Of a stretch of DNA of 64,000 nt, positions 50,000-57,535 are shown piece after piece; position 1 is the first letter of the stretch; the number at the start of each line of letters is the position of its first letter. The DNA lies in the NCBI GenBank assembly GCA_004431415.1, contig QPMI01000198.1:1-64000 (forward strand), given 5' to 3'. Under the pieces are notes generated by a model. It made no database searches and was not told where the DNA came from. It was given only the letters and a program-made list of their open reading frames with translations. The DNA comes from Cyanophora paradoxa CCMP329 (taxonomy: Eukaryota; Plantae; Glaucophyta). The translations under genes and the position numbers were made by a program.

Positions 50000-50543
50000 A
50001 GTTAGAACTTCGGAACTATGATAAGTTATCGAGTTAGTAAGTTGACGTCCCGGCTGGCCCAGTGGGGCCGTTTGCTGTAAATCATAATCAACCAATCAAA
50101 CAGTCAATCGGATCCAGTCAATGCGATAGGTGGGGAAGCCGGGGCGACGGGCGAGCGGGAGCTCCGGAGCGGGGTGGGGGGAAGAGGGGGTGCCAAGTGA
50201 AACGGAGGGCGGTGAACGGCGGGACGATCGGGGGCGGGGAGGAATGGAGTACCCCCCGGCGCTAGAAGTCGCCCGCCCCGCCCCCGCCGCCCCTCTCGCT
50301 CCAAGGAAATGAACGCAACCAGTCGTTGCAGGAACTTATGGAAGGGACACGAGAGGCAGCTCCAATAGTGCGGGGAAAATAAGACTGTAGACACGGGAGC
50401 CCGAGGGGCAGCAAATGGAAAGGGTTATCGGGAGCGGGGCCCGGAGGGCCCGGAATGGAAGCGAGAAGGTGACGGGGAAAGCCGGGGGGGCAGCGGGTGG
50501 GGAGGGGGAGGGTGCGGGGCGGGGCGGGATGCAACCCCGGGGC

Positions 50544-51628
50544 CTAGAAGTACTCGTTGGCGTAGTAGAAGACGTCGAGGCCGCTCTCGTCGCGGGCGAG
50601 CGCCCCCGCCGCCTCCGCGATCCGCGCGTACTCCCCCGCCAGGGGCGCCCCCACGCCCATGCCCGCCGCGAGGGAGACCACCGTGAGGGGGCCCCGCGCC
50701 GCCGCGAGCCGCCGCACGTCCTCCGCCAGCGCCGCGTCGCTCCGCCGCACGTCCGCCAGCACCCGCGCCCCGCTGCCGCCCCGGCCCGGCGGTGAGCAGC
50801 GGGCAGTCCCGGAGGCGGCGCTCGGGGCACCTGTCGAAGCTGCGGAGGCGGAGGGGCAGGGCGAGGGGCGCGAGGGCGGCGCACGCGCCGAGGAGGTCCT
50901 CGGGGGAGATGAGCGCCGTGCCCCGCGCGCGGTTCGCGAGGCAGTACGCCTCCTGCAGCGCCAGCATGCCCCCCGCCCGCGCCACGTGCGGCTCCAGCAG
51001 CGCGCACAGCTCCCGCGCAAGCTCATCGTGGAACGCCGACCCCGCGTGTTCCCTGCGCCGCCCCGCGCCGTGAGCTAGCGCCTGGGCGGCGCGGGCGTGG
51101 GGGCCGCACTTGGTCACCGCCCGCCCAGGCTGCGCGGCGCGCGTCAAGGGCCGCGCAGATGCGCAGAATGCTTAGCTACGCACCAGCCGGAGGCCAAGCT
51201 GCGTCGCTACCGACCGGAAATCGTCGTCCTCGGCACTGGTGGGCTGCGCCGACGCCTTGAACCGCTGCGGGGCAGGTGGTGTCAGAGCGGGCATTCGAGC
51301 GTGGGCTGGGGCACACTTCGGCGAGATCGACGAGCTCCTTCGCCCGCTGCATGAGTGCCTTGATGTCGCCCGAGAACGCGCTTTGCAGCGTCTGGTCCGT
51401 CTGCGCGTCCCGCGCCTCGCCGGCGCGCTGCAGGCCAGCGACGCCCGCGTACTGCGCGTTACGAAACACGCCGGGCTGCATGCTTGTGGGCTGGCTCGCC
51501 GGCTGCTGCGCTGCGGGGCCGGAAGGGTAGCTCGGCTGCGCAGAAGGAGGCGTGGCGCGGGACGACGTGGGCAGCGCCGGCTCGGAGGCGCCGCCCCGGC
51601 TGCGCTCCTTGCTCTCCTTGCCGCCCAT
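50544..51628 (-). CDS. VPS36: ESCRT-II subunit VPS36 (EAP30/Vps36 winged-helix region) with no GLUE domain
   Basis: AGVAGLQR..TDQTLQSAFSGDIKALMQRAKELVDLAE, FHDELARELCALL, GGMLALQEAYCLANRARGTALISPEDLLGAC, LARDESGLDVFYYANEYF*. Confidence 0.88.
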
Positions 51629-51745
51629 CGAGCGGCCTGCAACTCCGAGCAGCCGTACCCCCCTCCAAGTTCTAAGCTGTATCCCCCGTCCGACCCCTGA
51701 AAGTGCGGCCTGCAGCAGCCGGCAGCAGCGGAAAGCACGGGAGAG

Positions 51746-54700
51746 ATGTTGCGAAGACCGCAGGGCGCCGCGGCGCTGGCCGCGGTGGCCCTTGCGCTCC
51801 AAACTGCCGGAGCCCTCGCACAGAACGCCGCCCTGGACAGCCTCAATGGGTCCAGCGAGAGCACGGAACGGGCGTTGTACTGGGTAGGATTTGCTGGGTA
51901 AGCCCCCTTTGCTCGCCTATGCGCACCGCCGTGTTGAAGGAATTCGATGCCGCAGGATGGCGTTCGGTGAGGGCGGGCTTGCCGCCATCGCTCGGTTTAG
52001 CTTTAGGTTGAAGTGACCCTGCTTCACGCGCAGGCGTTGCTTGTTTCTTCGGGCGCTGGCTTTGTGCGCTGGTTCCCTGCCCTCTTCCTTGATCTGAGGC
52101 CTCACCGTGCGCCGCGCCGCGCGTTTTGACAGGGAATGGGCACAGAGATTACGTACGTGCTTGATCGTTCCCTTTGCGCACGCCTGCGCGGCAGCTAAAC
52201 CGCTTGGCACCGCATCCGCATTTCAAACTTCAGTACGGTGCGCAGCCGTCCAGCGCCGCTGCCGACCCCTAATGCGGACCATTGAACTGAAAATGATGCG
52301 CTATTGCAGTGCTGAACGCTTTCCAAGTGCTGGTCGCTTGCATGGCGTACTGGTGAGCCTTCCGCGTCCGCGCTAGCTGATTCCATGCTGAACCAGCGGG
52401 CAGGGGACTCTCTTTTCTTCACGGACAGGTCGATATGAACGTGCGCACGCGCTTGCCCTCCGTAGAACTCGCCTGCCGCGCGGATCGCTGGTGCAACGCC
52501 AAGCGGGAGATGCTCTCGTCGCTGACGCCGCCTCCAGGGCTTCCACGTGAACTGGATTCGCTACGTGGATTGGGTCTTGTGCGCTCCCGTCCTCGCCGCC
52601 CCCGAGCTAGCATGTGCTGTGCGCTCACGCTTCTCGGTGTGCTCTCGTCCCCGACAACAGCTCGACACCTATGTGAGTCTTTCCTCTCTCGCTCTGTTCT
52701 TCAGCCTGTCACACGCGCTCACTGTGCGTAGGATTCTCCTGTGCATCGCGTCGATCGGGCGCTACACATGGAACCAGAAGGCCCGCTGCTCCTTCTCCTT
52801 CCTTTTCCTCCTCTTCCCTGACCCCGGAAACAGATCGCGCTCGTCCTCGCCGACGTGACCATGATCGTGCGCGTCGCGCGGGGCCCCTGCTCCCCACCGG
52901 GGGCTCAGCCGCCGCGGGGCAGGGGATCGGGTTCTTCGCGGCCATCGCGCCCGAGCCCGGCCGCTGGGGCTTCTTCGCCTTCAGCTGCGCCATCTTCGTC
53001 GCCATCGCCGCGGTCCTCATAAAGGCGAGCCGCCCTTTTTTCTCTCTCCGAGGGCCCTCCGCCCTTTCTCACTGCTGCGCAGGGCTCGCCCCGCGCGCTC
53101 CAGCGGCTCCCGCGGGGCGGGCCGCGGACGGGGTACAAGGCGATGCTGGCGCTGACGCTGCTGACGTGGACGGTGTACCCGATCATCTTCGGGGTGGGCC
53201 CGGAGGGGGCGGGCAAGCTGAACCGGCAGGGCGAGGCGATCGCCCACACGGTCCTCGACCTCTTCGCCAAGGTCGTCTTCGGGTGCCGCATACCCCCCCC
53301 CCTCTCCCCCCGAACCCCCCCGCAGTGCATGGGCAGGCCCTACTGACGCCCCCGCCCCGCCCCCGCCCCCCCGCAGCTTCCTCTACCTCTACGTCGCCGA
53401 GCGCCGCTTCCGGCACCACAAGAGGCACCGCGACCCCGTGCGCCGCGGCCGACTCCGCCCAGCCGCCCCGCGCCGCCCCTGAGCCCCTCCCCCGCAGGAG
53501 TACGGCCGCGACGCCAAGTACGAGTCCGCCGGCGGCCACGGCTACGCCGACGTGCGCGGCCCCGCTCCCGGAGCGCGGGCGCTGCCGAGCGGGGCGGCGC
53601 AGGGCCACGCGCAGGGCGCCCGCCTGGGGCCGGACAGCACCTCCTCGACGCAGCGCAGCGGGTGCGCCCCGGGCCCCCGGCGGCGGCGGCCCTCCCGCGC
53701 CCGCCTCAGACGGTGGCCGCAGGGAGCAGAAGAAGAAGGCCTCTCCGGAGCGCAAGTCCTCCACGGACGGGAGCCCGAAGGCGAGCCCCGCCCCCCTAGA
53801 GCCGTCGGGGCTACGCGCGCGGCCGACGCGCCTGCGCGGCCGCAGAAAAAGTCGGGCTTCATGTCGTGGTGGCGGAACCGGCCGGCGGCGCGCAAGGGCG
53901 AGGAGAGCCCGCCGGCGCCCCCCGAGGTGGCCCCGGCCCCCGTCCCCTCCGCCACAGCCGCCGCCGTCGAGGTGCGCTTCGGGCCGCCCCCGCCTCCGGC
54001 CCCGCGCTGGGCCCCGCGCAACGGGGCGGGCGCAGGCGGCGCGGGCGGCGGGGTCGGGCCCGATGGGCCCGGACGGGCGGCGGCTCCAGGTGGGGGACCA
54101 CGTCTACTTCCGCGACGAGTCCGGCGAGTCCGAGGTCGGCGGCCCCCCGCACCTTCCCAGCGTCGCCGCCGCCCGCGAGCCGCCCCGGCCGCCGCAGGTC
54201 GGCCGCATCGTCTCCTTCTCGGAGGACGGGCGCAAGCTCCGCGTGCGGCGCTTCCTGCGGGCGCGGCGGATGGCGCGGGTGCAGCTCTCGGCGGCGGCGC
54301 TGGCGATCACGCGGGAGCCGCGGCAGTTCGACCGGCTGCTCGTGCGCTCGAACCAGCTCGTGCTGGTGGACACGGCGCACATCGTCGGGCGCTGCACCGT
54401 CGAGAACGCCGCCGACGTCGCCGACCTCTCCGCATACCTCGCCCGCGACCAGAACGCCTGGTGCCGCCCCGGCCCCTCGAGCCGCCGCCCCCGCAGCGAC
54501 CTGACGCCCCGCCAGGTTCTACGTCGACTCGTACGACGTCCTCACCGGCCGCACCGCCCGCGGGGACGCCCCGAGTGCGCCCCCGCCGTTGTCCACTTCG
54601 CCCGCGCCCCGGCCGACGCCGCCGCCGCCGCCGCCGCAGACGCCTCGTCCCACGAGGACAGCACGTCGGACGATGACGTGACCTTCGAGATGGAGTACGA

Positions 54701-55842
54701 GGGGGCGCCGCTCGGCGGCGGCGTGCCCCCGTCCCCGCGGGCCCCGAGCCGGCCGCGGGACCCGCCGCCGCCGGAGCGCTCGGGCTTCGGCCCGCGGGGC
54801 GCGGAGGGCGGCGTCCGCATGCAGGCGACGCGGACCCCGCCGGAGCCGAACCCGCTCGCCTACACGGAGGGCATGACGCCACGGCAGGGGCGACCGAGTG
54901 GGACCCGGAGCCGCCCGCTCCGGCCGCGCCTCGGCGGACCCGCCCGCGGCGGGCCCTGGGCGCCCCCGTCCCGCCCGCTGGCGCCTCCGGCAGCGGCAGC
55001 GGGCGCGGCCCGTGGGGCGCTCCCGTGAGCGGCGCCGAGTCGCAGTGGCGGAGCAGCGGCTGGAACCCGCAGGAGGGCGCCGCCGGCCGCCCCGACAGCC
55101 GCGGCCCGGGCGGCGCCGGCTGGGACGACCGGCGCGGGAGCTACGGGTACGGGCCTCCGGGGCCGGCCGCGACAGCCGGGCCGGCTCCGTCTCCGGGGCC
55201 GCCGGCGGCGGGCCGGGCGGCCGGGAGGAGACGCGCAGCCCGGAGCGCTTCGAGAGCGCAGCAGGGCGGCCCGGCACGCCGGCGTTCGCGGCCGGCGCCG
55301 CCAGCGGCGGTCCGAGCAGCGGCTACCAGCGCATGACCCTGCGGAATCCGAGCCGGGAGCAGGACTCGCGGAGCCCTCCGAATGTCTCCGGGGCGGGCGG
55401 CAGCTATGGACGGGTCGGCAGCCCCGGCGGCGGCTGGCAGGATGCGGGCCTTGCGCAGTCCGGCGGCTCCGGCGGCGGCTTTGGCCGCGAGCAGGAGTCC
55501 CGGAGCCCGCAGCTCGGCGGCGGCGGCTACCAGAGACCAGACCAGCGCCCCGCCGGCTTCGCAGGCCGCGAGCAGGAGTCCCGGAGCCCGCAGCTCGGCG
55601 GGGGCGGGGGCGGGGCCCCTCAAGGGCGGCAGCAGGAGACGCGGATCCCGGAGCTCGGCGGGGCCACAGGAGCGCCCTCCGGGGCGAGCCGCGGGCCATG
55701 GGGCCAGCCGGCGCGCGCGCCGTCTCAGAGCGGATCGGCAGGACCGTGGGGCCAGCCCGTGCGGCCGCCCTCGCGCGGCCCCTCCGAGCGGGATGCCGAG
55801 AGCACCCCGCAGGGCAGCCGCTTCGTGCAGGTAGCGCTGTAG
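51746..55842 (+). CDS. Type-1 (microbial) rhodopsin with a signal peptide, fused to a C-terminal BAH-like domain and a G/S/P-rich tail
   Basis: Spliced 7TM with WIRYVDWVFSTPMILLC (helix C), LADVTMIGIG (D), WTVYPIIFGVGPEG (F) and HTVLDLFAKVVFG (G). The frame continues to LQVGDHVYF..EVGRIVSF..LRVRRFLR..LVRSNQ..HIVGRCTV..FYVDSYDVLTG. The 3' end is uncertain (55028 or 55842). Confidence 0.85.
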
Positions 55843-56366
55843 CTTTAGACATAGACAGGCCGAGAACACTTTATGGTTGCAGAGCTGGCAGTAATGTGAA
55901 AGATCTGGAGGATAAACTTCTAAAATCAGACTAGGCTTCGGATGTTGACCTGCATTGATCTGCATGAGCAACTCCAATCGGAAGCTTAAGTCCAGTTGAC
56001 CATGAGTATCGAACGATATACCGTATGGATCTGGATTGCAATTGCGCATGAGCTACACTCAGTGACTAGATATCGATCTAGATGCCTCACGTAAATGATG
56101 CCACCGCACCACGCAACTATTTTAAACTGAATCGAATAACTTAGTAAGATCGCACACACAAGCTTCACGAGTCATGATCAGTGACAAATTTGAATGCCCA
56201 TACTATGATACGAAAGTCTAGCAACAGACGATAAAGATACCAATCATGCATGGACTAAAATACAGGGGCTGTGCTTGAAAAAAGGGCGCGCGGGCCTGCG
56301 GAGGACAAGGCGGGGTAAGGTTTTGGTAGCTTGGGACGACGGTGAGCGGGGAGGGCGCACGGGGGG

Positions 56367-57535
56367 TTACTGCGTCTTCGAGTGGAGCTCCAGCTCGAAG
56401 CGGGCGTCCGCTTGCAGGAAGCGGTACCTAGGGGAGGGGAAAATCAGGCGCCGGGAGCGTACGGGAGGGGCTGGGGGGCTCACCAGAGGACGGCGAGGAG
56501 GGGCGTGGCGGCGTGCCAGAGGGAGTGGGCGTCGAGGAGGAGCCAGACGGGGGGGAAGTCGCCGAGCTCGAGGGCGATGGCGGCGTGCAGGCCCAGCAGG
56601 GCCACCACCAGCATCCACGCGTGCGGCCGCCGCGTGCGCGCCACGAACACCACCCAGGCAAGCGTGTGGAGGGCCCCCACGGCGACGCTCGCCGCCATGT
56701 TGTACCCGTAGTCGAAGCGCCCGAAGGAGAGGTACGAGACGTGGGCGATGTACAGCAGCACGAATGTGTAGCCGATGAGACGCGGGCAGTTCCACGCGTT
56801 GTGGATGCGAAGCAGGGCCGCGTACAGGCCGCCAAGGACGACCAGTCCCGCGCTGAAGTAGTCGAGCTTCTCCGTGAGTGGCGTATCCCTGCAATGGAAG
56901 ACCGCGCTCCACAGCCAGGCATTGACGTTCGCCGCCGCCGAGAGCATGAAGACGCGGCGGAAGGGGAGGTTGGAGGGCGCCTTGCGCCGGAACCAGCGGT
57001 AGAAGTACGCGTGCACCGCCAGGTTCGCGAGCGAGAAGAGAACCGAGGCGGGCTCCTGTATGCCCCAGACGCGCACGAAGGGCCACTTGCCGTAGTACTG
57101 CAGCACAGTCTCGTTGCGCTCCAACCGGATCTCCGTCACCGCGTGCATGCACTCGTACGCGCAGTTCTCGTCGCACGTCCACCGAAGCAGCTTCAACGCG
57201 AACGGGAGCTCCGCCGGGCCCGTGTCCGCATCCTCGGTGTCGTTCCTCGCCTTCACGACTTCCTGCACGGCCGCTATCATCGCCGCTTCGTCCTCGAACT
57301 GCTCCAGCCCACCCGCCGCTATCTGCCCAATTGCTTCTTGCAGCCGCCGCCTTTCGAGAGCCTCCTTCCGAGCTTCCGGCCCCGCGCACTCCTCGACTAA
57401 GCACTCGTCTAAGCAGTGCTGAAAGCCGGGTTCGTTGTCGCCGAGCGACGCGATTGCTGGTGCTACATAAGATGCTGCGACTACGGCGAAGAGTAGCGCC
57501 GCGAGCGCCCACGGCGCTAATCGTACTCGCCGCAT
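56367..57535 (-). CDS. PGAP3: PGAP3/Per1 GPI lipid-remodelling protein
   Basis: Signal peptide, ASLGDNEPGFQHCLDEC, WTCDENCAYECMH, QYYGKWPFVRVWGIQEPASVLFSLAN, WSAVFHCRDTPLTEKLDY, LELGDFPP, DAHSLWH. One intron near the 3' end. Confidence 0.95.

What the first reader, a model, noticed from the sequence alone, without database searches (positions are those of the whole stretch)
51746..55842. Microbial rhodopsin fused to a BAH (chromatin-reader-type) domain: candidate light-sensing-to-chromatin module
Seen: GT/GC-AG introns join one open frame. It runs from a signal peptide (MLRRPQGAAALAAVALALQTAGALA) through seven hydrophobic helices with type-1 rhodopsin hallmarks (RYVDW at ~52559; retinal lysine in DLFAK at 53269). 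A linker with basic NLS-like clusters follows (RRFRHHKRHR, KKKASPERK, SPKKKS), then a domain at ~54073-54550 matching the BAH pattern (VGDxVY..GRI..RFxR..S..IxGRCxV..FY..YD..TG), then a long disordered tail. Established: BAH domains occur mainly in chromatin proteins (DNMT1, ORC1, Sir3, polybromo). Known enzymerhodopsins carry cyclase, PDE or histidine-kinase modules. Inference: a photoreceptor using BAH as its cytoplasmic/nucleoplasmic output, either on the nuclear envelope, by proteolytic release, or as an interaction scaffold. I know of no described rhodopsin-BAH architecture but could not search.
Basis: partly seen in the sequence, partly recalled or inferred. Interest (0 to 1): 0.92.

Follow-up and report, generated by a model that had tools for sequence, protein, structure and literature searches.

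The report
Algal rhodopsin with cage-less BAH domain
In the alga Cyanophora paradoxa a light-absorbing membrane protein really is made in one piece with a domain of a type usually found in chromatin proteins; the pairing was already listed in a 2023 computer survey, and the domain lacks the pocket that reads histone marks, so it more likely binds partner proteins at a membrane than chromatin.

Summary
The fusion is real but not new. Spliced contigs from two studies join the rhodopsin and BAH exons in one 22-exon frame. Five bases missing from the assembly extend it to 906 aa, ending at 55842. Pfam finds Bac_rhodopsin and BAH. The protein is Cyanophora paradoxa tig00000849_g4760, which Sushmita et al. 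2023 (PMC10865886) list as CyapaRh2. The scan noted a similar fusion on another piece of this genome (s1-517540).

New here: transcript support; a corrected tail; a D-S-C helix-C motif without the proton donor (the paralog keeps D-T-D); and loss of all three methyl-lysine cage aromatics in both paralogs (E/R/L, E/R/M, by sequence alignment). The basic clusters are not shared with the paralog.

Best reading (about 0.5): a slow-cycling membrane photosensor whose BAH is a cytosolic protein-binding module. A direct light-to-chromatin link stays possible (about 0.2).

The parts
51684..55842 (+). Whole gene (CyapaRh2 = tig00000849_g4760): 22 exons, 21 introns of 51-97 nt, 906-aa frame after RNA correction
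51746..51820 (+). Signal-peptide-like N-terminus (basic start, hydrophobic residues 7-25, A-x-A end); paralog has a similar one
   Evidence: hydropathy, alignment; no signal-peptide predictor was run
51866..53398 (+). Type-1 rhodopsin domain, about residues 41-253, exons 1-14; seven helices
   Evidence: Pfam PF01036 E 2.6e-41; AlphaFold pLDDT 95; Z 31, rmsd 1.5 to bacteriorhodopsin
51956..51966 (+). 11-nt microexon
   Evidence: (table 5c)
52234..52237 (+). 4-nt microexon
   Evidence: (table 5c)
52661..52672 (+). 12-nt microexon inside helix C; carries S114 (BR T89 position)
   Evidence: (table 5c)
52559..52573 (+). RYVDW: R107 (BR R82), D110 (BR D85 counterion); helix-C motif D-S-C, with C121 at the BR D96 donor position
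53257..53271 (+). DLFAK: D237 (BR D212), A240 (BR A215), K241 retinal lysine
53402..54083 (+). 126-aa low-complexity linker with basic clusters at residues 254-263, 306-308 and 322-324; no similarity to the paralog's linker
54084..54549 (+). BAH domain, about residues 381-497, exons 19-21; cage positions E397/R415/L417
   Evidence: Pfam PF01426; Atlas features 0.92; MTA1 alignment
54640..55842 (+). Last exon: Gly/Pro/Ser/Arg-rich tail (about 400 aa) with short internal repeats; five bases missing from the assembly
   Evidence: (table 4)

Best explanation
CyapaRh2 is a membrane photoreceptor of the bacteriorhodopsin fold, probably in the plasma membrane or another membrane of the secretory route. 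Shown: one transcript and frame; a complete retinal pocket by sequence; a seven-helix fold; a BAH shared with a distant paralog. Inferred: retinal binds K241. Light moves the Schiff-base proton to D110, and the R107/E219/E229 group can release it outside. With Cys in place of the D96 donor, reprotonation is slow, so the active state lasts long and little current flows. Type-1 topology puts the 68-kDa C-terminal part in the cytosol. There the cage-less BAH and the disordered tail hold partner proteins next to the rhodopsin, and the long-lived photo-state, a local pH change or light-dependent phosphorylation of the linker and tail changes that complex. The BAH is about 125 flexible residues from helix G, so it most likely acts as a tether, not as a rigidly coupled switch. 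The partner and the downstream response are not identified; the photophobic reaction of Cyanophora is one candidate output.
For: Spliced contigs and exact coordinate fit. Pocket residues R82, D85, D115, W182, Y185, P186, E194, E204, D212, K216 equivalents present. Model pLDDT 95; Z about 31 to bacteriorhodopsin and 30.6 to sensory rhodopsin II. D-S-C motif against D-T-D in its two nearest relatives. DSE-motif rhodopsins, which share the Ser, pump little or not at all and cycle very slowly (PMC10865882). BAH kept at 33% identity, E 1e-15, between paralogs whose linkers share nothing. Cage aromatics, needed for methyl-lysine binding in AIPP3 (PMC7718874), are absent in both. BAH domains mainly mediate protein-protein contacts (PMC9910501). 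Cyanophora has a photophobic reaction but no phototaxis (PMC2781859).
Against: No absorption, photocycle, localisation or partner data. A240 is pump-like, not the Thr/Ser of haloarchaeal sensory rhodopsins (own knowledge). The paralog has a full pump motif with the same BAH, so the BAH need not be a signalling output. Cage-less BAH domains can still bind histones weakly (PBRM1 BAH2, PMC10425938). The BAH model is poor (pLDDT 44), so the cage mapping rests on sequence alignment.
Confidence: 0.5

Rival explanations
1. Pump with an anchor: the family are light-driven proton pumps (CyapaRh4 active, CyapaRh2 slowed or regulatory). The BAH and tail only place, cluster or pair the pumps at a membrane site, independent of light.
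For: CyapaRh4 and the third clade member have D-T-D. A215 and the proton-release Glu pair are kept in CyapaRh2. The long flexible linker argues against direct coupling.
Against: CyapaRh2 lacks the donor Asp. Ordinary pumps need no folded cytosolic domain (own knowledge), yet the BAH is kept in both paralogs.
Confidence: 0.25
2. Light-to-chromatin link (first reader; Sushmita et al. 2023): the protein sits in the inner nuclear membrane, or its C-terminal part is cut off and imported, and the BAH binds nucleosomes or chromatin proteins without a methyl-lysine cage.
For: BAH domains are chiefly in chromatin proteins; the best sequence match among solved structures is MTA1 (E 0.007) and the top, weak fold match is DNMT1 BAH1 (Z 4.3). 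Cage-less PBRM1 BAH2 still binds histone tails; Sir3 and Orc1 BAH bind the nucleosome body (cited in PMC7736783). Basic clusters follow helix G.
Against: Cage lost in both paralogs. Basic clusters not shared: the paralog is acidic after helix G. The signal-like N-terminus points to the secretory route, and a 68-kDa cytosolic part is large for passive entry to the inner nuclear membrane (own knowledge). No shared cleavage motif seen. The nuclear signal quoted in the 2023 paper lies inside BAH strands.
Confidence: 0.2
3. Annotation artefact: two neighbouring genes joined by the gene model or by read-through.
For: Contigs are unstranded and cannot prove a single molecule; the genome is very compact.
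Against: One open frame over 21 canonical junctions in unbranched contigs from two studies; no second start seen; a 39%-identical paralog has the same order of domains.
Confidence: 0.03

Closest known systems
CyapaRh2 (Sushmita, Sharma, Kaushik, Kateriya 2023, PMC10865886)
   Same: The same protein: the paper's quoted string matches our BAH exactly, the architecture is given as Rh + BAH, and the same three mechanisms are proposed.
   Different: In silico only in the text read. This work adds transcript support, the corrected 906-aa tail, the D-S-C motif and the loss of the cage.
CyapaRh4 (P0010, tig00000865_g5067.t1)
   Same: Signal-like N-terminus, rhodopsin (39% identical), linker, BAH (33%), low-complexity tail; same cage loss; same clade (SH-aLRT 98).
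   Different: 596 aa; D-T-D pump motif; Phe at BR Y185; acidic, His-rich linker.
Bacteriorhodopsin and DTD proton pumps; cyanobacterial MrHR T74D
   Same: Fold (Z 31, rmsd 1.5 A), counterions, proton-release Glu pair, A215; best PDB sequence match is MrHR T74D (E 3e-28).
   Different: No D96 donor; Ser at T89; Gln at V49; large cytosolic extension.
Sensory rhodopsin II and DSE-motif rhodopsins
   Same: Donor position or T89 altered, which goes with a slow photocycle.
   Different: No Htr transducer known in this eukaryote; no Thr at 215; DSE proteins keep an acidic donor and have no BAH.
Enzymerhodopsins (HKR, Rh-GC, Rh-PDE)
   Same: Rhodopsin fused to a cytosolic module.
   Different: No catalytic domain; seven helices plus a signal-like segment; long disordered linker instead of a coiled-coil signalling helix.
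Histone-reading BAH domains (AIPP3/EBS/SHL, BAHD1, ORC1, DNMT1 BAH1) and MTA1-type BAH
   Same: BAH sequence profile and strand pattern.
   Different: All three cage aromatics replaced; attached to a membrane protein.

Membership tests
Type-1 (microbial) rhodopsin | Seven-helix bacteriorhodopsin fold | tested here: met
   Model pLDDT 95; Z 31, rmsd 1.5, 217 aligned to 4hyx
Type-1 (microbial) rhodopsin | Retinal lysine in DxxxK of helix G and aromatic pocket residues | tested here: met
   D237, K241, W207, Y210, P211; PF01036 E 2.6e-41
Type-1 (microbial) rhodopsin | Binds retinal and photocycles | not testable with these tools
   Needs expression and spectroscopy
DTD/DTE outward proton pump | Acceptor D85, counterion D212, R82 | tested here: met
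   D110, D237, R107
DTD/DTE outward proton pump | Carboxylic proton donor at position 96 | tested here: not met
   C121; motif D-S-C
Haloarchaeal sensory rhodopsin | Thr/Ser at BR 215 and a cognate transducer | tested here: not met
   A240; flanking genes are Vps36 and Per1
Channelrhodopsin | Helix-B glutamates, E at 85, C-P in helix C, ChR clade | tested here: not met
   Alignment with ChR-type rows; outside the ChR branch
Enzymerhodopsin | Fused catalytic domain (kinase, cyclase, PDE) | tested here: not met
   Only PF01036 and PF01426 score; NCBIfam blank
BAH domain (PF01426) | Sequence profile match | tested here: met
   32.8 bits over 30.8 cut-off on the genomic stretch, 27.4 on the full protein; paralog 26.5, E 6e-6; Atlas features 0.92 and 0.93, ten of ten best hits BAH
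BAH domain (PF01426) | BAH beta-barrel fold | tested here: inconclusive
   Model pLDDT 44; top match DNMT1 BAH1 Z 4.3, tied within 1 with unrelated SH3-like folds
Methyl-lysine-reading BAH | Aromatic cage (AIPP3 Y149/W170/Y172) | tested here: not met
   E397/R415/L417 and E438/R456/M458, by sequence alignment to MTA1 and motif spacing; not confirmed by structure
Methyl-lysine-reading BAH | Binds histone peptides or nucleosomes; nuclear location | not testable with these tools
   Needs pull-downs and localisation

The most novel reading that the evidence does not exclude
A retinal photoreceptor that acts directly on chromatin: at the inner nuclear membrane or after light-triggered release, its cage-less BAH binds nucleosomes or chromatin proteins, giving a one-component route from light to gene control.
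Probability: 0.2. Interest if true: 0.85.

Novelty: already known. Interest (0 to 1): 0.4.

Why it matters
Many modular rhodopsins in genome surveys rest on gene models alone. This one now has transcript support and a conserved paralog, so it is a sound target for bench work. A BAH domain on a membrane photoreceptor is outside the known chromatin roles of the family. The pump-type and donor-less paralogs form a natural pair for testing how a pump becomes a sensor, and one may underlie the photophobic response of Cyanophora, whose receptor I did not find named in the papers read.

Tried and rejected
The joined spliced model was built only inside scripts and was not sent to any search tool. Searches used exons by window reference, or the public record P0001 by id, which matches the model over residues 1-588 and the last 221.

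Word-index protein searches found only the query itself and missed even the known paralog, so they say nothing about other glaucophytes. Pattern scans for BAH relatives in metagenomes and for the three-member clade in prokaryotic genomes were blank.

A cyanobacterial origin, suggested by the top PDB hit MrHR, was not supported: in a quick tree the three sequences form their own branch (98) nearer other eukaryotic pumps (90), apart from the cyanobacterial rows sampled. That tree is unrooted, sparsely sampled and left out MrHR-type, channelrhodopsin and the longest-branch rows. Ribosomal uL6 hits to the BAH are weak, cover the middle part only, and are taken as chance. The source organism of P0005 could not be found. 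One search compared two alignments of the same sequences and is uninformative. A sequence look-up in the scan's notes was blank, which means nothing here.

Full report
Observation. The region is a compact, GC-rich eukaryotic gene on the + strand. Public runs hold about half of its words, as expected for spliced RNA. Laid on 51300-56300, run X1 gives one 2453-nt contig over 51684-55512 and run X4, from another study, one 2442-nt contig over 51695-55512. Both skip the same introns; the unspliced run X9 skips none. From these joints I built a 22-exon model with 18 GT-AG and 3 GC-AG introns of 51-97 nt and three microexons of 11, 4 and 12 nt. It reproduces the contig's own coordinates at all ten checkpoints, which also fixes the junctions not listed in the tool's table.

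One correction. In the assembly the frame stops at 55028 (633 aa). All three RNA-like runs carry five extra single bases in the GC-rich last exon; with them the frame runs to the stop at 55840-55842 and gives 906 aa. The long contig ends at 55512, inside a 61-nt direct repeat, so the last 330 bases rest on frame continuity and a second contig. The joined model stayed in my scripts and was not sent to any search tool; searches used exons by reference or the public record P0001.

Identity. The BAH stretch finds one protein, P0001, EukProt tig00000849_g4760.t2 of Cyanophora paradoxa. It equals my model over residues 1-588 and the last 221. Pfam gives Bac_rhodopsin (E 2.6e-41) and BAH (E 7e-8 on the genomic stretch, just over the cut-off; E 3e-6 on the full protein, just under). 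Language-model features place it with BAH clusters. A search with the helix F-G exon found a paralog, P0010 (tig00000865_g5067.t1, 596 aa), with the same domain order. It also found P0005, a 314-aa synthetic-construct opsin of unknown source that ends before any BAH could start. The three form one branch (SH-aLRT 98, quick tree). Between the paralogs the rhodopsin (39%) and BAH (33%, E 1e-15) are conserved, while the linkers show no similarity. This suggests the BAH has been kept by selection since an old duplication.

Rhodopsin domain. The model is confident (pLDDT 95) and matches bacteriorhodopsin at Z 31, rmsd 1.5 A. By motif-anchored numbering it keeps R82, D85, D115, M118, W182, Y185, P186, E194, E204, D212, A215 and K216. 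It has Ser at 89, Cys at 96, Asn at 46, Gln at 49 and Phe at 189. The motif is D-S-C, against D-T-D in both relatives. Loss of the D96 donor slows reprotonation, as in sensory rhodopsins (own knowledge), and DSE-motif proteins pump little and cycle very slowly (PMC10865882). I infer a retinal-binding, slow-cycling protein with weak or no pumping. It is not a channelrhodopsin or an enzymerhodopsin.

BAH domain. The best solved-structure match is MTA1 (E 0.007). The predicted model is poor (pLDDT 44), and fold searches are inconclusive although DNMT1 BAH1 ranks first (Z 4.3). Methyl-lysine-reading BAH domains use a three-residue aromatic cage, Y149/W170/Y172 in AIPP3, and mutating these residues reduces or abolishes binding (PMC7718874). 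By alignment to MTA1 and by my knowledge of the flanking motifs, the equivalent positions are E397/R415/L417 here and E438/R456/M458 in the paralog. The Glu and Arg are the same in both and might pair across the pocket (inference). This argues against a histone-mark reader. It does not exclude weaker or cage-independent chromatin binding: PBRM1 BAH2 lacks the cage and still binds tails (PMC10425938).

Location. The N-terminus looks like a cleavable signal in both paralogs (no predictor run). Type-1 topology puts the 653-residue, 68-kDa C-terminal part in the cytosol. The basic cluster right after helix G fits the positive-inside rule, and the paralog is acidic there. Nothing tested here favours the nucleus.

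Mechanism. Best reading (0.5): a slow-cycling membrane photosensor whose BAH and disordered tail tether partner proteins. Rivals: a pump family in which the BAH is only an anchor (0.25), a direct light-to-chromatin link (0.2), an annotation artefact (0.03). The transcript, frame, fold, residues and paralog are shown; retinal binding, kinetics, location and partners are inferred.

Prior knowledge. Sushmita et al. 2023 (PMC10865886) list CyapaRh2 and CyapaRh4 as rhodopsin + BAH. The string they quote for CyapaRh2 matches our BAH exactly, and the one for CyapaRh4 occurs in P0010. Their discussion proposes membrane signalling, cleavage with nuclear import, or nuclear-membrane location. It was the only paper in the held library that combines these terms, and I found no experimental work on either protein; subscription journals are mostly not held. 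The scan's notes list a similar fusion on another piece of this genome, probably the paralog.

Verdict. Real, expressed, and already listed in silico, but uncharacterised. Novelty: already known. Interest 0.4. The most novel open reading, direct control of chromatin by a rhodopsin, has probability about 0.2 and would merit 0.85.

Noticed in passing
window 54886-55150: Five single bases present in all three RNA-like runs are missing from the assembly; the public 854-aa gene model differs from the RNA-based 906-aa frame over this stretch.
   Followed up: yes
window 52234-52237: A 4-nt microexon is used in all three RNA-like runs. The two public isoforms (t1, t2) differ only at residues 72-73, at this spot; the RNA supports t2.
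   Followed up: yes
window ~50500-51660 (- strand): A Vps36/EAP30-family (ESCRT-II) gene lies head-to-head with the rhodopsin gene; the RNA contigs of the two end only 24 bases apart (51660 and 51684), implying a tiny bidirectional promoter.
   Followed up: partly
window 55572-57535 (- strand): A Per1/PGAP3-family gene (E 7e-89) converges on the rhodopsin gene; a deeper RNA contig covers 55572-56295 and beyond, so the 3' ends of the two transcripts appear to overlap.
   Followed up: partly
P0005 (AHH02111.1, 'protein 72', synthetic construct): Third member of the clade, D-T-D, sharing with CyapaRh4 a conserved stretch of about 40 aa after helix G (37% identity, E 8e-10). Probably from a published algal opsin screen (own knowledge); source species and any test result not found.
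   Followed up: partly
window 52310-52352 (helix B): Gln78 sits at the BR Val49 position next to the Schiff base, where the relatives aligned have Val, Cys, Ile or Thr; it could tune colour or pKa.
   Followed up: no
window 55466-55772: The tail holds short coding repeats (three R-E/Q-Q-E-S/T-R-S/I-P units and several G-P-W-G motifs) that could be phosphorylation or partner-binding sites.
   Followed up: no
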